From: Macrostomum lignano
Lineage: Eukaryota
DNA: 64,000 bases
Reading direction: 5' to 3'
NCBI GenBank assembly: GCA_002269645.1
Contig: NIVC01000046.1
Location: forward strand, 205,306-269,305
Within the stretch, counting starts at the first letter, position 1. Each line of letters opens with the position of its first letter. The notes beneath the pieces were generated by a model. The model was not told where the DNA came from. It did no database searches and saw only the letters and a program-made list of their open reading frames with translations. Below, piece after piece: positions 8,420-48,000 of this stretch. The position numbers and the translations under genes are program-made.

Positions 8420-8625
8420 TTCACTGCTCGGAGAGATGTTTTTGAGCAGCTGAGTTTGTGGTAAGCAGTTTGGCATCTCCAGTCAGATAGGACTCATTTA
8501 TAGTTATAGCAACTCTGACAGGCAAACATAAAATCGGCCCTATTGGCCCAATCGGGTCTGTTACGAGCGTAGCAATTTTTTTAATAGGTTTATACAGTCA
8601 GTGTACTTTCGGACATTACTCTTTC

Positions 8626-13399: not shown

Positions 13400-13760
13400 C
13401 AATGAGAGGAGATGAGAGAGGAGAGTAGAGGATGGAAGAGAAAAGAGAGACGAAAGGAGAGAGAAGACAGCTGAGAAGAGACACCAACCTTGATCGGGCC
13501 AGATTGCTATTGTAAAGTTTCACAGCACCCGAGGGCCGGATTGAGCGGGCCGGAGTCTGCCGACCCCTGCATCTGCAATAAAGCAATCTTCTCTTTGCTT
13601 TTAATCGTTATTTAATCGATGATCTCAAAATCAGTTTTTTGGTCAGTTAATAAATTAAATTTGACTCGACGATAGAAAGTTTAAATATTCGCTGAAGTAG
13701 GTCACTTTTGTTAAAGTTACTGACGATCGCTTTAAATGTTTGAATATCCACCCTACCGGC
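13400..13760. repeat. Interspersed repeat, second copy at ~25800-26185
   Basis: Shared GA-rich tract, GAAGACAGCTGAGAAGAGACACCAACCTTGATCGGGCCAGATTGCTA and downstream AT-rich block in both copies. Confidence 0.85.
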
Positions 13761-15080: not shown

Positions 15081-16304
15081 GAGCCGCTGCAGATGTGCCC
15101 GCTGGGTCTCTGGCCAGGCTAATTGCTCGGTGACGCCGCTTTTTTAAGCGGTCCGTACCGCGATGCAACAGGTCTTTTCACCTTATCATGCACCTTAGCC
15201 GTTGTTGGCTTGGCTTCGTCCAAAGCATAGAAGCTCGTGATGGCATTTGCGTGCGTTATAGATTTATAGCTAGAGATGTAGGAATAATTTCAACACTTAA
15301 TGTATTAGATAATATTACATTTCTACTTACAGTAGCTGACTTACGTCAATTCATGTTTGAGTTTCTTTCAGATTCATTTGCGAAAAATTGCAGCATGAAA
15401 ATTCTGCAAAGTTATTTGAGACTTATTTGAATGCCGCTTGAGCGGACTCATAAAGCTCGTTATATTGCATAATGAAATGATTCTCACCTTGAAAATAATT
15501 CAGGAATGTTACTTTGAAGCCCAGATGCTGATCAGTCAAAGATGTTTTAGATCCTGCCAGACAAGCTCGACTCTGCATATCTCTTCTATTGAATCTGACA
15601 GCTACTTGTAGGTCGGGAGTCAAACGGGAGTCCATTATCGTCCGAACTGTCTCTGACACTGTCGACCGCTTAGCGAGAAGAAGCAGAGTTTTCTATAATG
15701 ACAGAAACAACGCATATGATTGACAAGTAATAGTTGAATCCGTGATTATCTAAGATTGTGTTGTCACTTGTCGTCAGGAAGAGTGCAAAGAGAATGAAAC
15801 AGACGAGTTTAACATAGAGGGATGCAGAAATAGCAAAAAATGAGACAAAAATGAGGTACGATAATTTAGCTAAATTGAGGTTGAGCTTAAAAAGATGTAA
15901 TTAATACGCTCGTAGAGGGTGAGATAAGTATTGAACACTGGAATGGAGTCTAAGATTTAAGTTTACTTGAAATATCTGGCTCCAAACTGACCATTTCTGA
16001 AAGCATCTCTGTTGGCTGCAACTCAACGAACTCCACACACACTTGCTCAGCGCGAATTGACGCCAGTTCTTCTAGGGAGCTTTGTTGGGTTTCAAATTTA
16101 CTGTTCTTCATCATTTGTTCGCGGAGAAGTGATTCCACGAATACTTTCCAAAGGAAGTCGACCACTGACTGAATCTGCCGCTGAAGCACGTGTACCAGAC
16201 TTGGCCCGAAGCCAAATACTGAAGGCTTTGAGGCAGTTGAGATGTCTGCGGCTGCTGCCTCTTCGACCCTTGGAGCCATCACTGCAGCTTCAATTTTTGT
16301 GATG

Positions 16305-17095
16305 GCTTCCGCTTTCGCTTCCGCTTTCGCTTCCGCTTTCGCTTCCGCTTTCGCTTCCGCTTTCGCTTCCGCTTTCGCTTCCGCTTTCGCTTCCGCTTTC
16401 GCTTCCGCTTTCGCTTCCGCTTTCGCTTCCGCTTTCGCTTCCGCTTTCGCTTCCGCTTTCGCTTCCGCTTTCGCTTCCGCTTTCGCTTCCGCTTTCGCTT
16501 CCGCTTTCGCTTCCGCTTTCGCTTCCGCTTTCGCTTCCGCTTTCGCTTCCGCTTTCGCTTCCGCTTTCGCTTCCGCTTTCGCTTCCGCTTTCGCTTCCGC
16601 TTTCGCTTCCGCTTTCGCTTCCGCTTTCGCTTCCGCTTTCGCTTCCGCTTTCGCTTCCGCTTTCGCTTCCGCTTTCGCTTCCGCTTTCGCTTCCGCTTTC
16701 GCTTCCGCTTTCGCTTCCGCTTTCGCTTCCGCTTTCGCTTCCGCTTTCGCTTCCGCTTTCGCTTCCGCTTTCGCTTCCGCTTTCGCTTCCGCTTTCGCTT
16801 CCGCTTTCGCTTCCGCTTTCGCTTCCGCTTTCGCTTCCGCTTTCGCTTCCGCTTTCGCTTCCGCTTTCGCTTCCGCTTTCGCTTCCGCTTTCGCTTCCGC
16901 TTTCGCTTCCGCTTTCGCTTCCGCTTTCGCTTCCGCTTTCGCTTCCGCTTTCGCTTCCGCTTTCGCTTCCGCTTTCGCTTCCGCTTTCGCTTCCGCTTTC
17001 GCTTCCGCTTTCGCTTCCGCTTTCGCTTCCGCTTTCGCTTCCGCTTTCGCTTCCGCTTTCGCTTCCGCTTTCGCTTCCGCTTTCGCTTCCGCTTC
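16305..17095. repeat. Homogeneous 12-bp array (GCTTCCGCTTTC)n, ~66 copies
   Basis: Seen directly; encodes (AEAK)n on the minus strand. Confidence 0.98.
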
Positions 17096-17655
17096 AGGCA
17101 CTCAAAGTTACCAAGACGCTTCAGACACTTAAGTTACCAAGACACTTCAGGCACTCAAAGTTACCAAGACACTTCAGGCACTCAAAGTTACCAAGACGCT
17201 TCAGGCACTCAAGTTACCAAGACACTTCAGGCACTCAAAGTTACCAAGACACTTCAGGCACTCAAAGTTACCAAGACACTTCAGGCACTCAAAGTCACCA
17301 AGACGCTTCAGGCACTCAAAGTTACCAAGACACTTCAGGCACTCAAAGTTAGCAAGACGCTTCAGGCACTCAAGCTACCAAGACACTTCAGGCACTCAAA
17401 GTTACCAAGACACTTCAGGCACTCAAAGTTACCAAGACACTTCAGGCACTCAAAGTCACCAAGACGCTTCAGGCACTCAAAGTTACCAAGATGCTTCAGG
17501 CACTCAAAGTTACCAAGACACTTCAGGCACTCAAAGTTACCAAGACGCTTCAGGCACTCAAAGTTACCAAGACGCTTCAGTCACTCAAAGTAACAAAGAT
17601 GCTTCAGTCACTCAAAGTAACAAAGATGCTTCAGTCACCCAAAGTAACAAAGATG
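17091..17655. repeat. 27-bp minisatellite, ~21 copies
   Basis: Unit ACTTCAGGCACTCAAAGTTACCAAGAC, with a variant at the 3' end and again at 17943-17995. Confidence 0.95.
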
Positions 17656-18229: not shown

Positions 18230-22900
<4,671 letters not shown>

Positions 22901-24900: not shown

Positions 24901-26830
24901 GGGTCGTAAAAACATGACAGGTGCGGCCATAAATCACTCAAAATCGCAACAAAATTATTTATGACTTTTCGCGTAGACTTGACAAAAATGAATGAAAAAA
25001 TATACATTAGAAAGCTCTTATTAAATAGAAAGTGAAGATAATGAAGAGAAATCGCTAATCGCTAATCCCAAAGTACTTTTATTGGTAAAACGCGCATAGC
25101 TGTCGAAGCTGTCACACGCTCGAGTGAACACGAACAATAGGCTCTGACCTCAGAAGTCTTGATGGCCTGTCAAAATGATGAGAAAAAAGCTACCGCCCGC
25201 ATCCTCTCAGACCATCTGGCGCCTGCCTCAACACTGAGTGAGGCGCAGGTGGCTGTCAGACCATGCAGCTACGAAAGCGATGATATGACCCAAAAAGCTG
25301 CGTCTATGTTTACTACTATAAGTATGACCAAATATTAAATCTAGTATAGATTCTATGACAATTCGCAGAAAAAGGATAAAAATGCCCACTGCCCACTGTT
25401 AGTAGGCTAGTAAGTTTAGAGCCCATGTGCTAGCGCGGGATTTGGAAAAAAGTGCATCCTCGAGCTCATCATATTCATAATTTAGGGTCGACCTTCGTTG
25501 AACTAAAACCGGTGATCAGGTCAAGAAGGAACTTTATCATTTGACAGGTCGGGGTTTTGGATAGAAAAGGGGAAAACTTACGTCGCATTCAGGTTAACAT
25601 TTACCATATTTGGAAAATCTAGCATAGATCGATGTTGCGAGTCTTTTTTTGAACTATAGAGAACTCGCTGTTTTCGTGATATTGCTGGTATTACTAAAAG
25701 TATGGCGCATGCTGTTTTTAAATTTGTATTCGTACCTTTATCGAAAGACCACTGGTCCTTGATTTTATCTTACTACTTCTAGTAGTCTACTTTGTTTTGA
25801 AAATCTCTACAAGAGAAGAGACGAGATGAGAGGAGAGAGGAGAGAGATGGAATGAGACATCGATGAGAGAGGAGAGTGAGAGAAAAGAGAGAGAAGACAG
25901 CTGAGAAGAGACACCAACCTTGATCGGGCCAGATTGCTAATTGTAAAGTTTCAAAGCAAGACGGCCGAATTGAGCGGGCTGGAATTTGCCGACGCGACCC
26001 CTCCTTGCACCAATTATAAAGCAATCTTGGAATTGTTAATTTCAAAATCAGTTTTCAGTTAATAAATTAAATCTTACTCGACGCTAAAAAGAGTGTATAT
26101 ATTCACTAAAAAGATAGCTGACGTCGGTCAATTTTGTTGAAGTTACTGACAATTGTTTTAAATTTTGAATATTATCCACCCTGCCAAAATTAAATTAATT
26201 AAATTAAACATTATAGGGTCGGAAAAACGTATTCATTTCCCGATTGACATTCAGATTCACATTCAAATTTTAACAAAGCCGCTGTAACTTTTCTTTACTT
26301 GAACGAAACGCTTTAAAATTTTACAAAAACTTTGACGCAATCAAGAAAAAAAACTACGTAAAATATCTCGGCATTTAAAAATAGACTGTACAAATTATTC
26401 ACATATAAAGTTTGTTCCTATCTCCTTAGTGTATTATTATGCAACTCAACAAAACGGCTTAAAATACACGCAGAGCTACGAAACTTTATTTTTCTCTTGA
26501 CGCACGCGAGATGCGTTGGCAAGTGAAAAATCAGCACCCTAGCTTAAAGCCTGTACGAGTTATTCACCTGCAAACTGTGTTCCTATCTCCGTAGTGTATT
26601 TTGGGGGTCCAGCTTGACATTCGCTGACAGACACTTCTACTCAACGCAGAGCTACGAAACTTTATTTTTCTCTTGACGCACGCGAGATGCGTTGGCAAGT
26701 GAAAAATCAGCACCCTAGCTTAAAGCCTGTACGAGTTATTCACCTGCAAACTGTGTTCCTATCTCCGTAGTGTATTTTGGGGGTCCAGCTTGACATTCGC
26801 TGACAGCCATGCAGCCATGCAGAAGACTTT

Positions 26831-28249
26831 TTAAACAGTGGATCCTCTTTCTGTGAATGATGAAGAGGTGACCGGACATTTTTTCAACCAGCATTTCGTC
26901 AACCGGCAGTTCGTCAACCAGACATTACGGCAACTCAGCAAATTGTAGCTGATAATTATATAGCTCTGCACCAGCCAGAGAATGTGAGAATGGCCGCTAT
27001 TAGCAACCGAGAGAGTCAAAAGCAGGGCTTCCAAGAACTCCAGAAAGCAGAGCTTCTCACCAGCAGCAAATCTGCCGGGCCAGATGCGCCTGATAATTCC
27101 TTGTACTTCTGCGGCAGAAGTATTTTTTAGAGCTAGCATTTGATGAAAAAGCAGCGGTAGAGATCTTTGCAAGTCGCTAGCTATGTCCCGTCTCATTAAT
27201 GGGCCGTTCTGCTCCATCCAGTAAAGAAGCTGAATGGCAGAATTGGCATAGCAGTCTGCTCCGCTATTTCTTAGTCCACAGAGAGGCTGCGGCTCTGAAC
27301 TTCTTGATGATGTTTGTTTGGCAGCCTTTGCCCCTGAACTATGCTCTTGACGAGGCTCTGTTCTAACATTTTCCTCAGCAGGTAGAGATGTGTAAAGATT
27401 AGCGTTGAGGCTTTTAGGAAGCTGTGTATCAACGAAGCGGCGCTCAGGATATCGTTGGCGAAAGCAATCTGGGTCGTAGGCATAATGACCTAGGAGCAAA
27501 AGAACTGCCATTACATGGCAGTCACAGCCAGCTGTTCGGCTACCAACTTTGGACGAGGAGTAGTGGGCATGTAGCCTCCTTAGACCGGCATCGTGGAATC
27601 CAAAAGGGTTTCCATTCGGTAAATCGCTGAGGCGAAGAAGGACTCGATATGTTCGAGATGTGTGCCTCGAAAACACAACGGACAAAAATATCCACGACGG
27701 TTGCCAGTTGCCGAATTTCTTTTGCCAGTTCCTTGCCTGCTGTTCTTGCCGGAATTTCCAGCAGCGCATCGATTGAGGCAGCTGCGATGCAAGGTCTTCA
27801 AGCTCTAACCACGTATCACCGTCGAAATACTCAAGCGTGTGTTCCACCTGGATGTTTTGGATATAGCTTTCAGACTGCTGTACATGAAATGGTCCCACAC
27901 TTACTTCGTGAAGGTTGTCTATCTCAATTCGAGGAAAGCCTGTGGACTCTGGATCTAGCACATCGACTGGTGACCAGCGCCTCGACCCTTCGATAGGAAT
28001 TCGGGTCACGTCACACAGGTAGTTCACACCTTCAATCGGATCGAATTCGTTGCTGAGAAACATGCGCCTATTAAAATTCTGACCAAACTCAAAAAGTGAG
28101 CTGTCATTCCATGACTTTGGCAGCGTTTTATTCAATGGGAATCCAATGTGCGATCGGTTGTATTTGGCAATACAGTTGTCGATAATGACATCTAGCCGAC
28201 TCGACAGAAAAGCGGAAAAGCGTAGCCAGCCTACTGGTATTTGACTCAA
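26831..28249 (-). CDS. 472-aa ORF: C-terminal part of DDE_Tnp_4/ISL2EU-like transposase with degenerate SWIM, fused to N-half of a USP (peptidase C19) domain
   Basis: GPFHVQQSESY, FSRHTSRTYRV and YSSSKVGSRTAGCDCHVMAVLLLLG recall that transposase family. GLRNSGADCYANSAIQLL is a USP Cys box. GEKLCFLEFLEALL resembles the QD..EF box. No DDE core and no His box. Confidence 0.65.
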   Translation of the reverse strand: MSQIPVGWLRFSAFLSSRLDVIIDNCIAKYNRSHIGFPLNKTLPKSWNDSSLFEFGQNFNRRMFLSNEFDPIEGVNYLCDVTRIPIEGSRRWSPVDVLDPESTGFPRIEIDNLHEVSVGPFHVQQSESYIQNIQVEHTLEYFDGDTWLELEDLASQLPQSMRCWKFRQEQQARNWQKKFGNWQPSWIFLSVVFSRHTSRTYRVLLRLSDLPNGNPFGFHDAGLRRLHAHYSSSKVGSRTAGCDCHVMAVLLLLGHYAYDPDCFRQRYPERRFVDTQLPKSLNANLYTSLPAEENVRTEPRQEHSSGAKAAKQTSSRSSEPQPLCGLRNSGADCYANSAIQLLYWMEQNGPLMRRDIASDLQRSLPLLFHQMLALKNTSAAEVQGIIRRIWPGRFAAGEKLCFLEFLEALLLTLSVANSGHSHILWLVQSYIIISYNLLSCRNVWLTNCRLTKCWLKKCPVTSSSFTERGSTV

Positions 28250-28545
28250 TAGCAGTCAGTTTTCCGTGAAGGGGGCGATCCTCAGCCGATACTGGATTCT
28301 TTGAGCCTTAGGTTCACATGAAATCCGGTCCGGTCACCGGATCGGAAATAAGTCCGGTCACCTCTTCATCATTCACAGAAAGAGGATCCACTGTTTAAAA
28401 AGTCTTCTGCATGGCTGCATGGTGTAGCAGACTCCCAATGAGTCCCGTTTTCGACTTCCGGGCTTCACCAGATGGCTCAAACAACTCCCGATCATGAGGA
28501 CCCCACTAAAGCAGCGTAAAAATGATGCGATGCGTGCTCATCAGC

Positions 28546-29765
28546 GTCAGCGAATGTCAAGCTGGACCCCCAAAATACACTACGGAGATAGGAACACAGT
28601 TTGCAGGTGAATAACTCGTACAGGCTTTAAGCTAGGGTGCTGATTTTTCACTTGCCAACGCATCTCGCATGCGTCAAGAGAAAAATAAAGTTTTGTAGCT
28701 CTGCGTTGAGTAGAAGTGTCTGTCAGCGAATGTCAAGCTGGACCCCCAAAATACACTACGGAGATAGGAACACAGTTTGCAGGTGAATAACTCGTACAGG
28801 CTTTAAGCTAGGGTGCTGATTTTTCACTTGCCAACGCATCTCGCGTGCGTCAAGAGAAAAATAAAGTTTCGTAGCTCTGCGTTGAGTAGAAGTGTCTGTC
28901 AGCGAATGTCAAGCTGGACCCCCAAAATATACACTGCGGAGATAGGAACACAGTTTGCAGGTGAATAACTCGTACAGGCTTTAAGCTAGGGTGCTGATTT
29001 TTCACTTGCCAACGCATCTCGCATGCGTCAAGAGAAAAATAAAGTTTCGTAGCTCTGCGTTGAGTAGAAGTGTCTGTCAGCGAATGTCAAGCTGGACCCC
29101 CAAAATACACTGCGGAGATAGGAACACAGTTTGCAGGTGAATAACTCGTACAGGCTTTAAGCTAGGGTGCTGATTTTTGACTTGCCAACGCATCTCGCGT
29201 GCGTCAAGAGAAAAATAAAGTTTCGTAGCTCTGCGTTGAGTAGAAGTGTCTGTCAGCGAATGTCAAGCTGGACCCCCAAAATACACTACGGAGATAGGAA
29301 CACAGTTTGCAGGTGAATAACTCGTACAGGCTTTAAGCTAGGGTGCTGATTTTTCACTTGCCAACGCATCTCGCATGCGTCAAGAGAAAAATAAAGTTTT
29401 GTAGCTCTGCGTTGAGTAGAAGTGTCTGTCAGCGAATGTCAAGCTGGACCCCCAAAATACACTACGGAGATAGGAACACAGTTTGCAGGTGAATAACTCG
29501 TACAGGCTTTAAGCTAGGGTGCTGATTTTTCACTTGCCAACGCATCTCGCGTGCGTCAAGAGAAAAATAAAGTTTCGTAGCTCTGCGTTGAGTAGAAGTG
29601 TCTGTCAGCGAATGTCAAGCTGGACCCCCAAAATACACTACGGAGATAGGAACACAGTTTGCAGGTGAATAACTCGTACAGGCTTTAAGCTAGGGTGCTG
29701 ATTTTTCACTTGCCAACGCATCTCGCGTGCGTCAAGAGAAAAATAAAGTTTCGTAGCTCTGCGTG
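28546..29765. repeat. 176-bp tandem array (~7 copies) within right TIR; ~2 inverted copies at 26470-26807
   Basis: GTCAGCGAATGTCAAGCTGGACCCCC at 28546, 28722, 28898 and onward. Confidence 0.95.
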
Positions 29766-30099
29766 TATTTTAAGCCGTTTTGTTGAGTTGCATAATAATA
29801 CACTAAGGAGATAGGAACAAACTTTATATGTGAATAATTTGTACAGTCTATTTTTAAATGCCGAGATATTTTACGTAGTTTTTTTTCTTGATTGCGTCAA
29901 AGTTTTTGTAAAATTTTAAAGCGTTTCGTTCAAGTAAAGAAAAGTTACAGCGGCTTTGTTAAAATTTGAATGTGAATCTGAATGTCAATCGGGAAATGAA
30001 TACGTTCGGAAAAACGGAAACCCAACTCCCCCTGATGGCTGCGATGGAGAAGAATGAAGTATTCTTTCAATGACAATAAAATAAAATGATTTTATTTTA

Positions 30100-34849: not shown

Positions 34850-36043
34850 TCAGAAATTTGGCCCGCGCTGGGCGAACACCCCCGGCAATTCCGGTGTACG
34901 GCCGGCGATCTCCTGGGCAATGGCCAGAGCGACATCGCGGGCAGCAGGCCTGTGCCTCGATTGCACTAGCTCCGGGCCGGCGATTACCGCGGCCTGGTCG
35001 AGGACGGCCTGTCGCTCCTCGTCAGCAAACGCACGCAGCCAGCGCAGCTCTGGCCAGTCAGCGGGTCTCGGTTGCGTGCCATCCCGGGCCGCTGCGATCA
35101 ACCAGGCGGCCACTCGGGAGGTCGCTTCTTCGATCATCCGCCGCCGCTCGTAAACGTCCGTGGAGCCGCCTACCAGCTCAAAGCCAGTCCCGGTCGTCTG
35201 GACGGCCGCGTCCGTCGTGCCTGCCCGAGCCGATGCTAGTGGGAAAGCTGCCTGCAGTTCAGCAGCCAGGTGGCTCCACGAGTATTCCGGCAGGCTGCTG
35301 GCACCTTCCGAGGCGATGCTGACTGGAGAGTTGGGCGGAGCAGGCGGATATGCGGCCTGCAACTCGCTCGCCAGGTTCTGCCATCCATGGAGTGGCAGGC
35401 TGTCCTCCTCCACGTGGGTGTAGTCGGTCTGAATGCCAGCCTCCAGCGACTCCGGCCACAGGTCCTCGGCCAACGTAGGCAGCAAGGGCGTGCTGATGCT
35501 ATTGGGCGGAGAAGCCGGGACCAGCAGCAAGTCCGGGCCAACGAAGCGCCAAGCCGTAGCCTCCGTAGCCTCCGTAGCCTCCGTCGGCGGCGTCGGTTCA
35601 GCCTTGACCTCCCGCTTGATGACCTGCGGGTAGAAGGGGGCTGCCGACGGCTGAGCCGTCAGCTGCTGTCGTGCGCGGGCCAGGCCGCTGTCGATCTCTT
35701 GGCGGATGGCCGCGCTCCCAGCGTTGAAGCTGCGGGGAGAGGCGACCTGAAGCCGCCGGACAGGTGTTGGCTCTCGCCGCTCAGGCGGCGGAGAGCGTCG
35801 GCGCGGCATTGGAGCTGACAGTCGGCTCGCCGGGCGGCTGCCCAACCGCAGGTGCACAGGCACGCGAGCCGCGTCTGAAGGGCCGCCAAAGGGCTCAAAC
35901 TGGCCGGCTGCTGCCCCGATCGGCCGGAGAGTAGCAGATGGCACCGGCATATTACCCGAGCGAGGTCGGCGGATATCGCGGCGTTCTTCGCTGTCACTAG
36001 GCGGCGAGCGCTCAATGCGTTTGGTTGGTTTGCGCGGGTGCAT
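34850..36043 (-). CDS. Accessory ORF3 of the Gypsy element (397 aa, no TM segment)
   Basis: ATG-initiated and uninterrupted, between integrase and PPT. Arg/Pro-rich N-terminus and helical C-terminal domain. Confidence 0.6.
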   Translation of the reverse strand: MHPRKPTKRIERSPPSDSEERRDIRRPRSGNMPVPSATLRPIGAAAGQFEPFGGPSDAARVPVHLRLGSRPASRLSAPMPRRRSPPPERREPTPVRRLQVASPRSFNAGSAAIRQEIDSGLARARQQLTAQPSAAPFYPQVIKREVKAEPTPPTEATEATEATAWRFVGPDLLLVPASPPNSISTPLLPTLAEDLWPESLEAGIQTDYTHVEEDSLPLHGWQNLASELQAAYPPAPPNSPVSIASEGASSLPEYSWSHLAAELQAAFPLASARAGTTDAAVQTTGTGFELVGGSTDVYERRRMIEEATSRVAAWLIAAARDGTQPRPADWPELRWLRAFADEERQAVLDQAAVIAGPELVQSRHRPAARDVALAIAQEIAGRTPELPGVFAQRGPNF

Positions 36044-39000
36044 TTCTGCGCTGGAATGCGTTTTAATCTGCGAGCGGATGCGGGCGATGCGGCTAGCATA
36101 AGTCTTGGCCCTAGGATTAATAACCAGCTCATTGTATCTGCTCGCACTGGCTCACGCCGAAGTGCACTTGCCTGGTTCGCTGGTGTCGTGACCGGTCCAC
36201 CTCCTGGCAGCACCCCCGGGATCGCCAAAGGCCGGAAGTGCCATCGGAAGGCCGGCCTTGCGTCGTAGCCGTCATCATCGTCATCATCGGCGTCGTCCTG
36301 GTCGTCCTCGGGGATCGGCGTCAGGGTCGCGGGTCCTGCGCCGTCGGGAACGTCAGGCGGTCGTTGACGCGTCCTTGGCTTGTCGACTTCAGGATCGGAA
36401 GTCCTCGTGTAGTCAGCGTCAGGCACGAGCAGAAGGTTCCGGCGATGGACGACTAGTTCGTCTCGTCTAGCTTTCGGGTTTGGCAGTCTCCGTCGAATCT
36501 TGTAGACGACCTCGCCCTTGGGCTCGACGACTTCATACAGTGCTTTGCGCGGTCGGTGAAACTTCGCCGCCTCGTCCGGTTCAAGCGCCGGATTGTTGAG
36601 GAAGACCAGGTCGCCAGGTTGAAGCCTCTTGGCGGCGGGCAGGTTCGAGTAGTGCTCGTCTCGCAGTTGCTGGTGCAGATGCAAGCGCTCCTTGGCTAGC
36701 TCAGTCGCTTCGTCCAGGCGACGTTGGAAGTCCTTGACGTAGTCGGGCAGGTCGGCATACTCGGGCAGCTTCTTCAGCGCGTTGTCGATCGGGAGTCGGA
36801 AGTCACGGCCGAACACCAGGTAGTGAGGCGTGAAACCGGTCACCGGGTGCACGCTGGAGCGGAGAGCCATCAGACAGGCCGGGAGGAAGGTGTCCCAGTC
36901 GTTGTGGTTGCGCTCGAGCAGACAGGTGAGGACACTCTTCAGCTGCTTGTTGAGGTTCTCGACTTGTCCATTGGAAGCTGGATTGTACGGTGTTGTTGTC
37001 GTATGCCGAATGCCAAACAGGTCGCAGAACTTCTTGAAGGCCGAACCGGTGAAGTTGGTGCCTTGGTCGGTGTGGATCCAGCATGGTACACCGAACTCAG
37101 GGATGAAGCGCTCCTGCAGAAGCTTGATGACTGTCTTGGCTTTCTGGTTTCTCATCGGGTAGGCGAATGGATACTTCGACGTCGCATCGCACAAGGTCAG
37201 GATGTAGCGGTTGCCGCTCTTGCTCTTCTGCGCGATTGGTCCTACTACATCACAGTGGATTCTACCCAGAACTTCGCAAACTGGGAAGCTCTGGACCGGA
37301 ACTCTCTCTCGCCGTCGCGATTTACTTTCAAGGCAGGTGCGGCACTTACTGATGAAGGTTTTGGTAGCACGGGCTAATCCGGGTCTCCAGAACCGTTCTC
37401 GTAGCCGCAGTAACGTCTTCGTCTCGCCGAGGTGTCCACACAGTGGCGAACTGTGGAGCTCCTGGAGCACCTGGGCGTCAAGGGCCTCAGGCAGAACAAC
37501 CTTTGGCGGCTGCTGGCCATCGGACAGGTCAATCAGCAGCAGGCCGTTGTCCTCCTGCAGGTTCTCGTAGTATCCGAGCAGGTTCCGCTGCTCCTTCGTC
37601 AGGCGCAACCGGGCGTCGAACTCAGGCTTCGGGGCTTCGTCCTTGACCAGGTTGAGCACGTAGCTAATGGCTCGGTCAGCGCGCTGGGCTTCAACGAACT
37701 GTTGGCGAGTCATCGGCAGCTTCAGAAAATCAGTGAGCACGTCGCGGCATGGCTGAGGGGTCATGACTACCGCAGTCTCCGCTTTAATGGCTCCAGGTCG
37801 ATCACACGGCACCGTCTTGTCGGCGTCAGGATTAGGTCGCTCCGAGGGACTTTGTCTCACAACGTCGGCGTACGTCCGTTGATCTCGTTTCGAAGTTCTC
37901 ATCGTCGCTCTCGTGACAGAAAATTCCGCAGATGGAGCAGCGCGCATGCCTCCACTGCCTAGCCCAGGCGACTCTTGGCTGTAGGGCGGGACGCAACACG
38001 TGAAGCACGCCTCGTCGCTAGCAGCCGTAGCCGTCGGCTCAGTCGTCGTCAATTCTGGGTGAGTCTTCTCCTGCACTGGGCGGTGTCGCAAAGGGGGACT
38101 CGACTTTCCGCACAGGCGATGAGCAGCTGTCTGTCGGCCCGGGGGACAGAGCTTCGACCTTGCAGCTGGCGCGAGATTCTGGCCTCTGTCAACACGGCGA
38201 GAAATCTCAGCGAAAGGCTCGGAGGGGTTGTAGTTAAATTGCTTGCCTGGAGTTGCGTTGCGGGCCGTCATCAGAAGGGCTGCTGGTGCGGTGGCCTTTG
38301 AATCTTGGTCCGTGGGCGTCTCCAGAGTCCGAGACCTGTAGTCTTGGGCATCGTCAAGGAGGTCTGTGTTCACAGTGGCCTCAAGGTCTTCGTCCAGGTT
38401 GGGACAAATTGCAGCGGGCGGCATGGGCATCGCGGCAGAGGGCTGTTGTCGCAGTGGCCTCTGGGTTGTCGTCCAAGCCGGTCTCCAGGCGTTGACTACA
38501 GCGGTGGGCGTCGTGCTGGAAGGCTGCTGGCGCGGTGGCTTCCAGGTCTTCGTCCAGGTCAGTCTCGGCCTCCAAGCAGCGAGAGTGGACTGTCTTCAGG
38601 AGGGCTGCTCTAGCAGTGGCCTCGGGTGTCGGGTCCAAATCCGGTTCCAGGTCGTGGTCGTCACCGGGTCGGGCTGTAGAACCAGGTTGCTCTAGCAGTC
38701 GGCCATGCTCGAAGGAGATCGGCGGCGCCTCCGGTCTTCTTGACAGGGCATCAGCGTTGGCGTGGTCCTTGCCTTTGCGGTGGTTGAGCTGGAAGCGGAA
38801 CTCGCTTAGGCGTTCGATCCAGCGGTCTAAAATACCTGTGGCCTGAGTCTGGTTCAGTAACCACAGTAAGGCCCGATGATCGGATCGAACTTCAAACTTC
38901 TTGCCAATTAAATAATGACGAAAATGTCGCATAGCGTCCACAATTGCAAGCAGCTCTTTCTTCGTGACCGTGTAGCGCTTCTCAGGATCGCGAAGTTTAC

Positions 39001-40951
39001 GGCTAAAGAATGCAATTGGACGTTCGACACCGTCGGATTGCAGTTGTCCAAGGCAAGCGCCTATTCGAATATCAGAGGCATCCGTGTCGAGGACAAACTT
39101 CACAGCAGGATCAGAATTAAATTCAGGCAGAGCGAGAACTTCAGTAGAACACAATTTCTTCTTCAGAGTGTCGAACGCTACCTGATGCTCGGGAGTCCAA
39201 TGCTGCCGCAGGCTGCCAATGTCCTTTCGCGTCAGGGCATGCAGCGGCGCAGCCACTCCAGCGTAGCCGTCGACAAACTTGTGGTAGTAATTGGCGAGGC
39301 CTAGGAATTGTCTCAGTTGAGTAACGGACTGTGGCACGGGCCAATCACGGATCTGCGCAATCTTGTCCTCACAGGTCTTCAGGCCGTCGGGAGTCACGAC
39401 GTGACCTAAATAATGCAGCTCCTTGAGGAACAATGACACTTCTTCGGCTTCACTTTGAGGTTTGCTGCGATGATGCGCTGGAGCACGGTCCGCAAATTAT
39501 CCAGCTGTTCCTCAAAGGTCACTGAGTGCACCACGATGTCGTCCATGTAGCCAAGCGCAGTCTTTGGCGTCAGGCGGTCCAGGAGCTTATTGATGCAACG
39601 CTGAAAGCTGCCGGGACTATCGTGGAGACCCATCGGTAGAACTTTAAAACAGAATTGGCCGCGGTCGATCACTGAGAATGCCGTCAAGTGCTGGTCGCAG
39701 TCGCGCAGCGGGATCTGCCAGAAACCTTGAGCAAGGTCCAAGCTAGAATACCACTGAGCACCACGAAGCTTCGCGAAGGTCTCTTGGATGTGCGGGAGCG
39801 GATACGGGTGATACACACACCTGTCGTTGAGAGCTCTGAAGTCGTGGACTAGTCGGATGTTGCCGTCCTTCTTGGGCACGATGAGCATTGGCGAATTGTA
39901 GCTCGAGTAGGCAGGGCGAATGATGTGCTTCGCCAGCATCTCGTCTAGCAGGGCGTCGAGCTTGTCCTTCAGATGAGGCGGGATTCTGCGCGGTGGTAGC
40001 GCAACTGGTGTCCGATCTTTCAGGACGATCTCGTGGGTCACCAGGTGAGTCAGGCCGGCGTCTAGCAGGTGCTTGGAGAAGGCCGCTTGACATTCAACTA
40101 GTAGATCTCGCACTCGCTGATGTTGTTCTTTGGACAATTCGCTGTTGATCTCGACTTCATCTAGCCATGCTATGCTTGACTCTTCAGGACTCTTCGACAG
40201 CTGTCGCACTTCAGGTTCGGGCGTCTCGCTCAAGTACATCAGGTCGGCAGTTCGGAGTGGCGTCGCAACACCAACACGGATACCGGCCTGCAGGAACACC
40301 TCGCTGTCGGCGGTGTTGACGACCTCAATGTAGCCGCGACCTTCAGGCATCGTCATCAGAGCAGGCGCTGCTTCCAGAGCGTTGCAGCTGGGATGCAGCC
40401 TCGACTTAACCAGCTCGACAATTGATGGCGATCCTCGATTCTCAGGGTGGCCGTCATCCAGTCTGACGGCAAGCAGCGCTGAACTTCTAGGCGGCAGGGT
40501 GCACTTCTCGGAGGTGTACACTCGGCGGGTCTGAAGCTCACGGCGCGAATAACGAACGGGGATGCACGTGCCGTTGTTGAACGTCAGCATTCCTTGAGCG
40601 AAGTCCAAGTTCTGGCAGTGCTCTCGCATAAACGATACGCCAAGCAATTTTTCACAATCGGAGACCGTCCGCGACGACATCACCGAACTCCACCGGAATG
40701 GTCACCTTACAAGCAAGTGGGAGCTGCGTCCCATCATACATAGTTACGCAATCGGGAATAGCATGCGATATAATACAACGAGGCATCCGACGTCTAATAG
40801 CGGCCCAGGTTGACGAACCAAGAAAGTTTTTCCGGCTGCCGCTGTCTAGCAAGAAAGGGACCTCTCGACTCGCAACTCGACCTGTGACGTACGGATCGGC
40901 CTCACGCGCATGGATTTTTTGATTCGGGAGGTGTCCACGAAACCTCCGCAC
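35659..40951 (-). CDS. pol: Gypsy pol (protease, RT, RNase H, long linker, integrase), broken by ~4 frameshifts
   Basis: FLLDSGS (PR); LDLAQGFWQ, LPMGL, YMDD (RT); LDTDAS...KKELLAI (RH); H-H-C-C zinc finger, HCDVVGP, HTDQGTNF, GQVENLNK (IN). Confidence 0.95.
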
Positions 40952-40961
40952 TCCGCGTCAC

Positions 40962-42217
40962 TTACTGGCGAGTGACTGTCGGACTGGGCATTGGCGCCTG
41001 CACAGCCGACATCCTCTTCTTCTGGTGACCTCTCGGAGTCTGCCAAGTAACCTGGGCTTGGACCTCGCGGAGGGCGGTGCCGTTGTCGCTCTCCGCCTGG
41101 CCGTTTCCCTGGTTCTGGCGCATCGGGCACTGGGTGTTGCGATGACCGGGCTGTCCGCAGCTATAGCAGATTATAGCTCTCTTCGGCGGACTGGCTATCT
41201 GCTGTTGGTCACGCTGCACCAGGTGATCAAGCAGTCGCTGCTGCTTCTCGATCAAGTCGGTTAGAGTTAGCAAGGCTTGGGCGGTGACGTCGGGCTTCGG
41301 GTCGCCGTCCTGCTCCCCGTCCAACATCCTAACCGGGGGTTGAGCGGTTCGCTGCGCCAATTCTTTGGCGCCTTCTAGTCGTCGTAGTTCTCGAATCGCA
41401 GCAAGAAGATTATTTGGGCGAACCCAGTACAGCCGTTCACGCAGATCTGGAGTCCGGATGCCAGCAAGAAATTGATCAGCGATCTCCTTCTCGCGGTCTT
41501 CAGGATGCATTCGAGGATACGCACGTTCACCAAGAGTTCTCAGGGCGTCAGCAAACTCTTCTGCTGACTCATTCTTGCCTTGTTGACGACGCCTCAACAG
41601 CTCTCTGTACTCATCAGCACCACCATGACGGGCAAATCGCTCAATCAGACGCTGCTTGACCTCCTCGTAGCTGGCAAAACGCGGAAGATTCATACCAAGC
41701 AAGGCAGGATACGCAGTCGCTAAGTCAAGACTCGCGATGAGGTGTTGTTCATCTCGAACGGGTCGACGATGCGCTCCATCTCGCAACGCTGCTCGAACGC
41801 GGCAAGCCAGACATGAATGTCCTGACTTGGAGTAAATTTCACAGTTTTAACTTGTTTACTCACGGGCCGCTCCATCTGCTGCTGCAGAGCTGCCATCATG
41901 GTCCTCACGTCCTGGTGCGTGATGTTCCGGCCGATGTTGTCCAGGCCTTGCAGAAGCTCGTCTGGCGGGTCGTCGGACACGTCGCTTCTGGCACCTCGCC
42001 TCGGCGTCGGCTGCTGACCAAAGTCGTTGATCGCTGCTGCTGCTGCGGCGTCCGCTGCCGCAGGCCTCGAACTGCTGATGTGCTGATCCAGCCGGCTGCT
42101 GCACCGGCTCTCGTCTCGCTCGTTGAACATGTTGAACTCGTCGTAGTCGCTGGCCGATGTCGTTCTCGAAAGAGCGGTTGGCTTGGGTGTGTCGTAGTCG
42201 GATCCCACCGCTGCCAC
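40962..42217 (-). CDS. gag: Gypsy gag with CCHC zinc knuckle (one internal frameshift ~41780)
   Basis: CYSCGQPGHRNTQC; capsid-like LRRRQQGKNESAEEFADAL. Confidence 0.9.
41103..41109 (-). promoter_or_regulatory. Putative -1 ribosomal frameshift slippery site G GGA AAC
   Basis: Correct phase in gag. The -1 frame is open downstream to 40846. A GCGGAG/CTCCGC stem follows. Confidence 0.65.
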
Positions 42218-45078: not shown

Positions 45079-48000
45079 ATGCCGCTGCCAGCCTCATCAC
45101 TGAGCCTGCTGCTCTTGTCTCCCAGGAGACTAGCAATCCCAGCCTCCATCTGTTGCTATCGCCAATTTCAAACAAGCCAATCGCTGAATAAAAACAGCGG
45201 CAAGCCCCGATTGAAAACCATCCCAGTGTCCAACGCTTCTCAACGAGTTGCCCGCGGCTCCGCGGCCGCCTCAGCTCAGGCTCTGCTCAACCTCACGCCT
45301 GAGGCTTTGAAGAAGAAAATTGAAGAGCGCAACGCGGCTGAGGCTGCCGATCCCAGACGGGGTCGCCAGCCGGAAGCGGAGTGCCACCTCCGCGACCTGT
45401 TCGAGCCGAGACGCCTGCCATTGGTGGAGATTCTACGAAGGCATCGAGAGTTTGCCTGTCCAGAGATGCTGGACAATCCGAGCGGTCAGCTGTATGCCAC
45501 TTGCTTGTTCGACATGACCTCTGTTAAGCAGGGCAAGTTTATGGCTCCGTTCTCTAAGGTGAGATACTGTTAGAGATCCCTATATTATCTTCATCTTCAT
45601 AGATTTAAGAGTGAGTTGTAGCCTAGTGAGAAGAGCCTCGGACTCACGACTGGAAGATCTTGGACTGGAAGTCCTTGGACTGAACAGCCGTAGGCAGCCT
45701 TTAGATGCGCCGCGCAATAGCTGCGGCTGAGCTGTCGGTTGCACATCTAGCTATTGGGGTAGATGTAATCAATTATTATTATTATTTGTGTCGTCGTGAC
45801 TCAGCACGACAATTTTGGCATCCTGATTTTTTGTGTTTTTTTCCAAGCTGGATACGTACGGTTAAAGATGCTGGTGTTTTATTTGATTTTGAGCTTTTTG
45901 ACTGACGTCAGCTAACAATCCTTAGTTTGGACCTTGGATGCCAAGCAATGCTGTGGTTCTGACGCTTAAAAGTTCAAGAAAGATCTAAAGATTTACATCT
46001 CTTAAGGTTGAGATTTAGACTCTTAAATCAATGTCCATCGGTGAGATTTAGGGGCCCTTAAGAGGTAGTAGGCTATACAAAGCCGGTTGGTATTTAAACA
46101 AAAGATAATTTGAATATCGATTTTTAAGATCGATTTTTATGTTGTAACTTTAAGTTCGAACTTCAAGATCACCTGGCGTTGCCTCAGGTGCTTGCAGCCG
46201 CCCCTGAAATTATTATAGAATTTTCCAAGCGATTTAATCCTCAGTGGGAAAATCAAGCTATTGAAGACTTGTTTTTCATTGTCTATGGCCCAAAAGGGGG
46301 TCTACGGAGCAGCCAATTTGAGAATCTGGGCGCGCAATTAATCCTTTCCTTAGTACTCGTATATCCTTCACGAATAACTTCATTGAAATAACGTCTGCAA
46401 ATGGATGTCATATCAAGAAACGATTTAACGTTAACACTTTGATTTTAGAAAAACAATCAAAACAGGCAAAGGCAAAACCATGCCATACAGTATAAGCCGA
46501 AAACAATCGTGTCTCTCAAAACAGTGTTGGACAGATTGAAATCAAACCCGATCAATGTTCAGAGAATTTCTTCCTCGTTTAAACAGCGTGGTATGAAGCG
46601 AAGCATCTGCCAAAACCAGCCACCGCATTTGGCTATTGTAATTTCATAGCGACGCCTGATCGAATACACTGTTTTTCTCTTTACGTCCAGCCATCGCGAA
46701 ATGTGCTCAGCACTACCACGATGGCAGCGACAATGAGGTCGTACTTTTCGTTGCTTATCTTGCGATAGGGTTCTCGCCCTGCAGGATTCTGCTCATCCAT
46801 CGCATCTTGTGCTGTAGCAAAACTTTCGTCACTGCTTTGCTCGCTAAATTCTTCGTTTGCCATATCTATGTCTAATGGAATCTGTTATTCTCTATGGTCT
46901 AAGGCTTGCACAACTGTTAAAAGGATTAATAGCGCGCCCAAATTCTCGAATTGGCTGCTCCGTAGACCCCCTTTCGGGCCATAGACAATGAAAAACAAGT
47001 CTTCAACAGGTTGATTTTCCCACTAAGGATTAAATCGCTTGCTCCTAGGCCTTAATTGGCTTAGAAAATGCTATACCCGATGCGCCACATACCAGGGAAC
47101 ACTAGTAAAAACTGACAAAGCATGGCGTACTTCAGAATATGTTTAAGACAGCGACTTGAAACTGCAGTATATTTGACTTTAGCATATTGCTGTACTTTAC
47201 TCAAAATATGAACCACCAGCCTCAATCACTTTGCTCAGGCGACCTCTGAATGCAGCACATGTGCGCTGAACAAAGACTCGGGGCATTGCATGCCACTCCC
47301 GCTGAACAGAGCGCCGCAGAGCTGCGACATTCGAATGACGCTTAGCACAGGCCCTGGCCTTCAGACGCGGCCATATGCCGTAGTCAAGGGGCGAGAGATC
47401 TGGTGAGTGCGCAGGCCACAAATCCTTCGGCCAGAAGTCAGGGGCCTCTGAGCTCAGGAACTCCTGGGTCAGGCGGGCAGTGTGTGCTGGTGCTCCATCC
47501 TGCTGCCAGATCCACGCATCGCCGAACGTTTGCCGAGCCCACGGGAAGATGTGCTGACGCAGGATGTCCACGTACTTGGCAGCATTGAGGCGTTCTCCAC
47601 GATCGAGGAAAATTGGTGGAGCAACTTGGCCATCGCTAGCCACCACACCAAGGAGCTGCAGGCCACCGCAGTACTTGGTCTTTTCGACAGCCTTGACGCT
47701 CCAGCTGACCATCTTGGAACTCTTAGCGATGTACCTGGAGTTCTCTGGGCCCAGGAACTCGTCCAGGTGAAGTGGAGTCTCGTCGCTGAACAACACGACG
47801 GTGTCAGGCCTCTTCGACTTCAGACGCGACAGCAAAGCTCTCGCTCTTCGCTGACGCTCTTCAACAGCTCCTTCTGGAAGGTGGTGACGTACCTGCCGCT
47901 TGAAGCACTTTGCGCCAATGTCTTCGTGAACGAGTCGACGCATTGTTGTCGCCGAAACACCACTCTGGGCTGCCAGACTGCGAAGAGATCTTCTTGCATT

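What the first reader, a model, noticed from the sequence alone, without database searches (positions are those of the whole stretch)
26831..28249. Transposase-like/SWIM region fused in frame to a USP (C19) deubiquitinase Cys box
One ORF carries the C-terminal motifs of a DDE_Tnp_4/ISL2EU-like transposase, followed by GLRNSGADCYANSAIQLL and an EFL..LL box. Ulp1 (C48) and OTU proteases are known cargo of MULE, Ginger, Zisupton, Helitron and Dada elements. I do not know of a described DNA transposon family carrying a C19 USP. The autonomous parent could use deubiquitination to stabilise its transposase or counter chromatin silencing (inference). This copy lacks both the DDE core and the USP His box.
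Basis: partly seen in the sequence, partly recalled or inferred. Interest (0 to 1): 0.8.

Follow-up and report, generated by a model that had tools for sequence, protein, structure and literature searches.

The report
Dead transposon copy with deubiquitinase remnant
This is a recently inserted, internally deleted copy of a cut-and-paste DNA transposon whose intact relatives encode a transposase fused to a complete ubiquitin-specific protease, so the fusion is a real and conserved transposon feature, although this copy is non-functional.

Summary
The 472-codon ORF (26831-28249, minus strand) is real. It sits inside a 3.78-kb transposon copy (26226-30006). The copy has 584-nt arms that are essentially identical, 176-bp tandem subrepeats within the arms, and an 8-bp (or 6-bp) target-site duplication.

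ORF residues 5-174 are 62% identical to the C-terminus of a metagenomic transposase (P0001: C2H2, HTH_Tnp_4, weak DDE_Tnp_4). Residues 252-416 align without gaps (42% identity) to P0003, which continues into a complete C19 USP domain with Cys and His boxes (Pfam UCH 1e-14).

A second lineage about 32% identical (P0005; at least 11 intact 1048-1050-aa copies) has HTH, DDE, SWIM and a full USP in one ORF. Three other lineages end after the SWIM finger and have no USP. The fusion is therefore not a one-off capture.

The window copy is a deletion derivative. It lacks both catalytic Asp residues, the catalytic Glu is out of frame, and the USP is cut after its EFL box.

The ISL2EU label fails on TSD, termini and domains. 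C19 cargo is not wholly new: a Trichomonas IS5-like transposase-C19 fusion and UCH in Helitron-like elements are published. I rate it a new variant of a known kind. The role of the deubiquitinase in transposition is inference only.

The parts
26219..26226 (.). Left target-site duplication TCGGAAAA (8-bp reading; the 6-bp reading is CGGAAA at 26220-25). Position 26226 is counted both here and in the left-arm row, because the two readings place the boundary one base apart.
   Evidence: The sequence directly abuts the inverted repeat and is identical to 30006-30013.
30006..30013 (.). Right target-site duplication TCGGAAAA (6-bp reading: 30007-30012). Position 30006 is counted both here and in the right-arm row, for the same reason as on the left.
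26226..26883 (+). Left (gene-distal, 3') terminal inverted repeat arm. It consists of an outer unique part (26226-26467), 1.9 copies of the 176-bp subrepeat (26468-26806) and an inner 77-nt part (26807-26883).
   Evidence: I1 is 584 nt and 100% complementary; I10 is 77 nt and 97%. (TRF)..
28346..30006 (-). Right (gene-proximal, 5') terminal inverted repeat arm. It consists of an inner 77 nt (28346-28422), a 123-bp segment absent from the left arm (28423-28545), 6.9 copies of the 176-bp subrepeat (28546-29764) and an outer unique part (29765-30006).
28200..28307 (-). Out-of-frame remnant of the catalytic-Glu segment of the DDE domain (..GKLTAIESNTSRLATLFRFSVE), followed by a frame-breaking deletion of about 87 bp.
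   Evidence: It matches P0001 at about residues 339-372 (RFAVEC motif).
26831..28249 (-). The 472-codon ORF of the finding. It is a gene remnant, not an intact gene.
27350..28201 (-). Conserved C-terminal transposase domain (ORF residues 17-300), family-specific.
   Evidence: 62% identity to P0001. (about 45 relatives at 25-35%). (pLDDT >90 for residues 40-290).
27482..27559 (-). SWIM-like element SSSKVGSRTAGCDCHVMAVLLLLGHY. It is degenerate: the first Cys pair found in relatives (CxC) is SSS here.
   Evidence: alignment shows the GCC[S/A]H motif in relatives. (Pfam SWIM in only 1 of 12 members, E=0.041)..
27002..27283 (-). N-terminal ~94 residues of a C19 USP domain. Cys box at 27224-27277 (catalytic Cys codon 27251-27253); QQD/EFL box at 27002-27058.
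26975..27001 (-). Deletion breakpoint region. Homology to the USP of P0003/L003 ends here; the rest of the USP, including the His box, is missing.
26884..26940 (.). 15-bp minisatellite (3.7 copies) between the USP remnant and the inner inverted repeat. The ORF reads through it.

Best explanation
The locus is a young, non-autonomous copy of a TIR cut-and-paste DNA transposon, produced by several internal deletions.

Full-length relatives encode one long polypeptide. In order it has N-terminal C2H2 finger(s), an HTH_Tnp_4-like helix-turn-helix, a DDE catalytic core of the DDE_Tnp_4 (IS5/PIF-Harbinger-like) type, a ~300-aa family-specific C-terminal domain ending in a SWIM-type zinc finger, and a low-complexity linker. 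In at least two lineages this is followed by a complete C19 ubiquitin-specific protease.

The window copy keeps only the 3' part of that gene, between very long inverted repeats built partly of 176-bp tandem subrepeats. It cannot make an active transposase or deubiquitinase. If it moves at all, an autonomous copy must mobilise it in trans (inferred).

Shown: the element anatomy, the homology, the conservation of the fusion, and the conservation of the catalytic residues in relatives.

Inferred: in the parent element the USP works in cis as a deubiquitinase or Ubl protease. It would act on the transposase itself, or on ubiquitylated chromatin or repair factors at the donor or target site. This would be analogous to the Ulp1 and OTU domains fused to MULE, Ginger1 and Zisupton transposases and carried by some Helitrons.
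For: Element anatomy:
- Arms 26226-26809 and 29423-30006 are 584 nt and 100% complementary, and an inner 77-nt pair is 97% complementary.
- The 176-bp arrays lie in inverted orientation in both arms.
- A direct repeat TCGGAAAA abuts both ends.

Homology:
- ORF residues 5-174 are 62% identical to P0001 residues 390-560.
- The L001 contig continues through the SWIM-like region.
- ORF residues 252-416 are 42% identical, without gaps, to P0003, which spans SWIM tail, linker and full USP.
- P0003 has catalytic Cys, His and Asp aligned to USP2 and USP15.

Second lineage:
- P0005 has HTH, DDE, SWIM and UCH (Pfam 2.8e-12, profile positions 2-253 of 254) in one 1048-aa ORF.
- At least 11 cluster members of 1048-1050 aa keep the DDE motifs and both USP boxes.
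- dN/dS between copies is 0.16 for the core and 0.43-0.48 for the USP.

Family assignment:
- The alignment shows D..D..E motifs (D[H/G]TY, [F/C]D[R/K]GY, RxxVE).
- DDE_Tnp_4 matches 4 of 12 members, best 8.6e-8, above the gathering score.

Degenerate relatives, as expected for a transposon family: L001 has a stop and a frameshift, and L003 has a 137-bp deletion.
Against: - No autonomous copy with the same TIRs was available, so it is not proven that these TIRs are the native ends of the transposase family.
- The 8/6-bp TSD disagrees with the 0-3-bp TSDs of all described PHIS groups.
- The USP domains of the two USP-bearing lineages are barely similar to each other (26% over the His box only). 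One ancient acquisition versus two captures is unresolved.
- USP dN/dS of about 0.45 is not significantly below 1 on the 48 differences available (my estimate, chi-square about 2.3, from the counts).
- Three lineages lack a USP altogether, so it is dispensable for at least part of the family.
- No biochemical evidence exists for any function.
Confidence: 0.85

Rival explanations
1. The long-TIR element belongs to a different superfamily with 8-bp TSDs and long, repeat-rich arms (foldback-like, MULE-like or P/Galileo-like). It merely picked up a fragment of a transposase-USP gene from another transposon as passenger DNA, as Pack-type elements do or by nested insertion followed by deletion.
For: - The TSD of 8 (or 6) bp does not fit the 0-3 bp of PHIS groups.
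- The gene fragment is truncated at both ends and has a third internal deletion.
- No relative contig shows TIRs that could be compared.
Against: - The P0005 lineage also has copy-number-variable tandem repeats just downstream of its gene, a similar subterminal architecture.
- The family is so divergent from PHIS (only partial DDE_Tnp_4 matches) that a different TSD length is plausible.
- No trace of another transposase lies between the arms.
Confidence: 0.15
2. Chance capture: the USP piece is a host USP exon that became joined to a transposase remnant in this copy only.
For: The window fragment alone scores below the Pfam gathering threshold. Only one copy is present in the window.
Against: - The same junction (SWIM tail, linker, Cys box) is collinear and gap-free in P0003/L003 from another source.
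- The same architecture is present in the distant P0005 lineage.
- The closest solved USPs are very weak matches: E=5e-7 (32.6 bits) to USP2 for P0003 and E=8e-4 to USP15 for the P0005 USP.
- The multi-UCH proteins are only about 21-28% identical, so the USP is not a recent host copy.
Confidence: 0.02
3. The relatives are domesticated host genes (a transposase-derived protein fused to a USP) rather than mobile elements, and the window holds a pseudogene of such a gene.
For: Many P0005-cluster members are intact and under purifying selection. No TIRs were seen on their contigs.
Against: - The window copy has TIRs plus a TSD.
- P0005-type copies occur as multiple 94-98% identical contigs in different samples, with variable tandem-repeat numbers.
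- The L001/L003 copies carry stops, frameshifts and deletions.
- The catalytic DDE motifs are retained.
Confidence: 0.05
4. The USP was acquired twice independently, once in the window/L001 lineage and once in the P0005 lineage, rather than once in a common ancestor with later losses.
For: - The two USP domains share only 26% identity over the His box. Their match (28.5 bits, BLASTP) is no stronger than the match of P0003 to human USP2 (32.6 bits, phmmer).
- In the NJ tree of the C-terminal domain the two USP-bearing clades are not sisters. The P0008/10/11 clade contains USP-less members and so does P0013/14/16 (USP absence was shown for P0008, P0010 and P0013 only).
Against: - The USP sits at the same position (after SWIM plus a low-complexity linker) in both lineages.
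- Deep nodes of the tree are unsupported.
- USP domains may simply evolve fast (dN/dS 0.45 against 0.16).
Confidence: 0.4

Closest known systems
PHIS superfamily (PIF/Harbinger, ISL2EU, Spy, Pangu, Nuwa; prokaryotic IS5) - Pfam DDE_Tnp_4 / HTH_Tnp_4
   Same: - The only transposase profiles that match the family are DDE_Tnp_4 (best 8.6e-8, above gathering) and, weakly, HTH_Tnp_4, in the right order.
- D..D..E motifs of the DxGY / RxxVE type are present.
- In the P0005 model the two Asp residues lie on or beside strands and the Glu lies in a helix.
   Different: - The TSD is 8 (or 6) bp, against 0-3 bp.
- The termini are ACGT/AACGT, not GG/GGG.
- There is no Myb/SANT or YqaJ second ORF on the contigs seen.
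- The transposase has N-terminal C2H2 fingers rather than THAP.
- It has an extra ~300-aa C-terminal domain with a SWIM-type finger, and a USP in some lineages.
Protease-bearing DNA transposons: Ulp1 (C48) in KI-MULEs, Ginger1 and Zisupton; OTU in Ginger1 and Helitrons
   Same: A ubiquitin/Ubl-specific cysteine protease is fused to the C-terminus of the transposase or carried by the element. It is present in some but not all lineages of a family (PMC2836005).
   Different: The protease here is clan CA family C19 (USP/UCH, PF00443), not C48 or OTU. The transposase core is DDE_Tnp_4-like, not MULE, integrase-like or KDZ.
Trichomonas vaginalis XP_001314237.1 (Transposase_11 / IS5-like plus Peptidase C19), cited by Bao et al. 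2010 from Gladyshev and Arkhipova 2009
   Same: An IS5-clan DDE transposase joined to a C19 peptidase domain. This is the closest published precedent.
   Different: - The Pfam transposase family differs (PF01609, not PF13359).
- It is in a protist.
- No C2H2 or SWIM was reported in the text I could read.
- It did not appear among the 50 hits of the exhaustive search with the window ORF.
- I could not read the primary paper.
HLE2 Helitron-like elements carrying a UCH domain (HELIANO, PMC11417382)
   Same: A Pfam UCH domain is reported as stably included cargo of a DNA transposon group.
   Different: Those are rolling-circle Rep/helicase elements, not DDE cut-and-paste elements, and a fusion with a transposase DDE domain is not involved.
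Zisupton (KDZ) transposons
   Same: From my own knowledge of Bohne et al. 2012, which I could not read here: an 8-bp TSD, a SWIM finger and a C-terminal Ubl protease.
   Different: No KDZ transposase or CxC-cluster Pfam match was found in any of 12 members. The protease is C19, not Ulp1.

Membership tests
Peptidase C19 / USP (Pfam UCH PF00443) | Cys box with catalytic Cys (N-x-G-x-x-C-[YF]-x-N-S) | tested here: met
   Window residues 325-342, GLRNSGADCYANSAIQLL. It aligns to the USP15 Cys box and to the P0003 Cys box.
Peptidase C19 / USP (Pfam UCH PF00443) | Score at or above the Pfam gathering threshold (23.9 bits) | tested here: not met
   The window ORF scores 17.6 bits, E=0.0031. The relatives pass: P0003 55.2 bits and P0005 47.2 bits.
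Peptidase C19 / USP (Pfam UCH PF00443) | His box with catalytic His and Asp/Asn | tested here: not met
   Deleted in the window; homology ends at about 27001. Present in P0003 (GGHYTA..DDSRV) and in the P0005 cluster (SGHYCC..NDNSV).
Peptidase C19 / USP (Pfam UCH PF00443) | Isopeptidase activity on ubiquitin or a Ubl | not testable with these tools
   Needs a biochemical assay of an intact relative.
PHIS / DDE_Tnp_4 transposases | DDE_Tnp_4 catalytic domain match | tested here: inconclusive
   - The window copy lacks this region.
- Among relatives, P0016 scores 32.4 bits, above the gathering score of 24.8, but covers only profile positions 1-51 of 158.
- Three other members are sub-threshold.
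- Foldseek with the P0005 model gives only non-significant transposase hits (Mos1, Tn5, ISCth4).
PHIS / DDE_Tnp_4 transposases | Target-site duplication of 0-3 bp (TWA, AT, none, ANT, CWG and similar) | tested here: not met
   TCGGAAAA (8 bp) or CGGAAA (6 bp) flanks the element. PHIS values are from PMC4482050 and PMC12730594. This rests on one insertion only.
ISL2EU | AT dinucleotide TSD in an A|AT|T target, with TIRs starting GG | tested here: not met
   The flanks are ..GGTCGGAAA|AACGTATTC and GAATACGTT|CGGAAAAAC.
ISL2EU | Transposase with THAP, HTH and DDE; a second ORF with a YqaJ exonuclease | tested here: inconclusive
   - Relatives carry C2H2 fingers, not THAP.
- Only the chimeric gene model P0009 has a THAP domain.
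- No Pfam family is on record for the other fully contained genes called on L004-L009.
- The contigs do not cover whole elements.
Zisupton / KDZ | KDZ transposase domain and CxC cysteine clusters | tested here: not met
   No such Pfam match at E<=1 in 12 family members.
SWIM zinc finger (PF04434) | CxCxnCxH signature | tested here: inconclusive
   - Relatives have C-x-C ... G-C-C-[S/A]-H, but Pfam SWIM matches only 1 of 12 members, at E=0.041.
- The window and L001 lineage has SSS in place of the first CxC, and GCDCH.
Non-autonomous deletion derivative of a TIR transposon | TIRs, a TSD, and an internal region that is a subset of a longer coding relative | tested here: met
   (TIRs and TSD). 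(three deletions relative to L001/L003).
Non-autonomous deletion derivative of a TIR transposon | An autonomous partner with the same termini in the same genome | not testable with these tools
   The host genome is not available. There is no other copy in the window, and the TIR pattern was absent from metagenome contigs.

The most novel reading that the evidence does not exclude
The window copy and its metagenomic relatives represent a not-yet-catalogued, superfamily-level lineage of eukaryotic cut-and-paste transposons. The lineage would have an IS5/PHIS-related DDE core but 8-bp TSDs, very long TIRs built of tandem subrepeats, and a ~250-aa C-terminal domain with no match among solved structures, ending in a SWIM finger. 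In it, a C19 deubiquitinase has become a selected, integral module of the transposase, so that deubiquitylation is part of the transposition mechanism.
Probability: 0.3. Interest if true: 0.7.

Novelty: new variant of a known kind. Interest (0 to 1): 0.55.

Why it matters
Ulp1 and OTU proteases have been picked up repeatedly by unrelated DNA transposons, yet nobody has shown what they do for the element. A third, unrelated ubiquitin-protease fold (C19), fused at the same C-terminal position of a DDE transposase, strengthens the case that removing ubiquitin or a Ubl helps transposition. It could do so by protecting the transposase from degradation or by acting on ubiquitin-dependent DNA-repair or silencing marks.

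The P0005 lineage has many intact 1048-1050-aa copies, which gives a directly testable system: wild-type versus Cys-to-Ala transposase. The family may also extend the IS5/PHIS assemblage to a group with a different TSD length and an extra domain of unknown fold.

For genome annotation, the window ORF should be masked as a transposon remnant and not called as a USP gene.

Tried and rejected
- Word-indexed protein searches with P0005 and with a 43-sequence family alignment returned nothing new. The candidate cap was filled, probably by low-complexity words.
- The metagenome scan with the TIR terminus found nothing. The scan with a composite L001/L003 protein found patterns but no confirmed relative. 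No extra DNA copies were obtained.
- A search for TIRs on the relatives' contigs L004, L006 and L009 found no flanking inverted repeats, so family-level TSD and TIR could not be checked.
- The search for a paralogous empty site in the window found only that part of the left flank is repeated at 13497-13757, ending before the insertion point.
- Foldseek with the window ORF model against the PDB gave no match with E<1e-3. With the P0005 model, only non-significant transposase hits appeared, and the USP part was poorly modelled because the alignment is shallow there.
- I tested whether the multi-UCH proteins P0020, P0022 and P0031 could be the source of the transposon USP. They are only about 21-28% identical, so I rejected this.
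- The resemblance between the L001 5' tandem repeat and the window 15-bp repeat is too weak to use.
- The primary paper on the Trichomonas fusion (Gladyshev and Arkhipova 2009) is not held. One literature search was wasted on 'Novosib'.
- Rfam found nothing in the window.
- The organism could not be identified with the tools allowed.
Full report
**1. Observation**

The listed start is TTG and the first ATG is codon 63. GLRNSGADCYANSAIQLL is at residues 325-342, with the Cys codon at 27251-27253. FLEFLEALLL is at residues 402-411.

Alone, the ORF gives only weak USP support. Pfam UCH scores E=0.0031 and 17.6 bits, below the gathering score of 23.9. USP15 in the PDB is hit at E=1e-4 over residues 305-395. 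No transposase profile matches the ORF itself.

**2. The ORF lies inside a transposon copy**

- Arms 26226-26809 and 29423-30006 are 584 nt and 100% complementary. A further inner pair, 26807-26883 and 28346-28422, is 97% complementary.
- Both arms contain a 176-bp tandem subrepeat in mutually inverted orientation: 1.9 copies on the left and 6.9 on the right (sequence).
- The right arm has an extra 123 bp (28423-28545).
- The inverted repeat ends exactly at AACGTATTC../..GAATACGTT. It is flanked by a direct repeat that reads either TCGGAAAA (8 bp, termini ACGT) or CGGAAA (6 bp).
- No second copy exists in the window.
- The near-identity of the arms and the open 474-codon frame point to a recent insertion or to arm homogenisation (inference).

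**3. What the ORF is a remnant of**

The exhaustive HMMER search found 50 relatives, all from metagenome, SRA or UniParc sources.

*P0001 and contig L001.* P0001 (560 aa) is 62% identical to ORF residues 5-174. It carries zf-C2H2, HTH_Tnp_4 and a weak DDE_Tnp_4 match. L001 continues, after a stop and a frameshift, through the SWIM-like region, and ends just before the position of the Cys box.

*P0003 and contig L003.* L003 comes from the same metagenome and is 89-95% identical in nucleotides to the 3' part of L001, with a 137-bp deletion. P0003 spans the SWIM tail, the linker and a complete USP (Pfam UCH 1.1e-14). Its Cys, His and Asp residues align to USP2 and USP15. Window residues 252-416 align to P0003 residues 22-186 with 42% identity and no gap. 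Homology stops at about 27001.

*Upstream of the ORF.* A different frame (28307-28200) encodes ..GKLTAIESNTSRLATLFRFSVE, the catalytic-Glu segment of P0001 (RFAVEC). About 87 bp are then missing, which shifts the frame.

The window copy therefore differs from a full-length element by at least three deletions:
- the whole 5' part, including both catalytic Asp residues;
- about 87 bp after the Glu;
- the 3' two-thirds of the USP.

**4. The fusion is conserved**

A lineage only about 32% identical (P0005, 1048 aa) has HTH, D..D..E, SWIM, a basic/acidic linker and a full UCH domain (profile positions 2-253 of 254, E=2.8e-12) in one ORF.
- Its 90% cluster has 20 members. At least 11 of them, at 1048-1050 aa, keep the DDE motifs, the Cys box and the His box.
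- They come from several ENA and Tara assemblies.
- Between copies, dN/dS is 0.16 for the transposase core and 0.43-0.48 for the USP. The USP value alone is not significantly below 1.

Three other lineages (P0008, P0010, P0013; 1043-1075 aa) stop a few residues after the SWIM finger and have no USP in the 0.4-0.8 kb that follow.

In an NJ tree of the shared C-terminal domain:
- window plus L001 group at 100%;
- P0005, P0006 and P0012 group at 100%;
- P0008, P0010 and P0011 group at 92%, and P0013, P0014 and P0016 at 76%. USP absence was shown for one member of each clade pair tested (P0008, P0010, P0013);
- deep nodes are unresolved.

The two USP domains are very dissimilar (26% over the His box only). 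Their match (28.5 bits, BLASTP) is no stronger than the match of P0003 to human USP2 (32.6 bits, phmmer). One ancient gain with losses and two independent gains both remain possible.

**5. Classification**

The family alignment shows D[H/G]TY, GDGNL, [F/C]D[R/K]GY and RxxVE motifs.

Pfam results across 12 members:
- DDE_Tnp_4 matches 4 (best 8.6e-8, above gathering, but only the first third of the profile);
- HTH_Tnp_4 matches 2, sub-threshold;
- zf-C2H2 matches 4;
- SWIM matches 1, at E=0.041;
- no KDZ or MULE transposase profile matches.

In the AF2 model of P0005 the two Asp residues sit on or beside strands and the Glu sits in a helix, as described for PHIS transposases.

The structural hallmarks of ISL2EU are AT TSDs, GG termini, THAP and a YqaJ ORF2. 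All PHIS groups have 0-3-bp TSDs. Neither set of hallmarks is met.

The ~250-aa C-terminal domain is predicted with pLDDT >90 but has no PDB fold match.

I therefore describe the family as DDE_Tnp_4-related but outside the described PHIS groups. Two caveats apply: the TSD comes from one insertion, and I could not query Repbase or Dfam.

**6. Mechanism**

Shown: the window ORF cannot encode an active transposase or deubiquitinase.

Inferred: the copy is mobilised, if at all, in trans through its TIRs and subterminal repeats.

Also inferred: in autonomous relatives the USP acts as a cis-fused deubiquitinase or Ubl protease. This is by analogy with the Ulp1 and OTU domains of MULE, Ginger1, Zisupton and Helitron elements. 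It is supported here only by retention of the catalytic residues in two lineages and in many intact copies.

**7. Novelty**

I found no paper describing this family or a DDE_Tnp_4-USP fusion.

C19 cargo is not unprecedented, however. Bao et al. 2010 cite a Transposase_11 plus Peptidase C19 protein of Trichomonas vaginalis. HELIANO lists UCH among the domains stably carried by HLE2 Helitron-like elements.

**8. Verdict**

The fusion is real and conserved. The ISL2EU label and the strength of the novelty claim are not supported. The function is untested.
- I rate it a new variant of a known kind, with moderate interest.
- The window copy itself is a dead remnant.

Noticed in passing
L004 1942-2010; also L005 and L002: In the P0005 lineage, ORF1 (580-592 aa: two C2H2 fingers plus an acidic low-complexity region) and ORF2 (the transposase-USP) are in the same frame. 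They are separated by a single TAG and 21 sense codons in three copies that are 94-98% identical. This could be readthrough, a two-protein strategy, or a shared defect.
   Followed up: partly
window ORF residues 40-290 (27380-28132, minus strand): The family-specific C-terminal transposase domain is predicted with pLDDT >90 but has no Foldseek match in the PDB at E<1e-3. It may be an undescribed fold.
   Followed up: partly
window 34850-42217, minus strand: A Gypsy-type LTR retrotransposon coding region (zf-CCHC gag, RVT_1, RT_RNaseH, Integrase_H2C2 plus rve). It has long open frames and GC of 0.57-0.61, against 0.40-0.45 around it.
   Followed up: partly
window 47197-48252, minus strand: An uninterrupted 351-aa Tc1/mariner-type transposase ORF (HTH_23/HTH_29 plus DDE_3).
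   Followed up: partly
window 18230-20117, minus strand: An exon-like ORF with a GWT1 (PIG-W) domain (19110-20117). It runs directly into a long microsatellite that translates as (SVCL)n.
   Followed up: no
window 15950-17132: A microsatellite of about 1.1 kb that is open in both strands and reads as (AEAK)n or (ASAF)n. Strong GC and AT skews are seen in this region.
   Followed up: no
window 7985-8476 (minus strand) and 63124-63753 (minus strand): A WSC-domain exon-like ORF, and an RNase H C-terminal fragment typical of a non-LTR retrotransposon remnant.
   Followed up: no
window 25927-26185 versus 13497-13757: The sequence just left of the transposon is about 70% identical to another stretch of the window, so the element landed in or next to an older repeat.
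   Followed up: no
P0020, P0022, P0031 (database proteins): Proteins of 1918-2916 aa made of 6-8 tandem complete UCH domains. They matched the query through the Cys box and are only about 21-28% identical to the transposon USP over longer stretches.
   Followed up: partly
window 22520-22764: A tandem array with nested 15-, 30- and 45-bp periods (GGGCGATTCTC..).
   Followed up: no
P0009 (UniParc UPI0007A1D47C, 2393 aa): A gene model combining a THAP domain, a fragment of this transposase family (39% identity overall, up to 51% in the best stretch, to window residues 5-183) and a PRP4 motif. It is probably a chimeric annotation that swallowed a transposon fragment.
   Followed up: no
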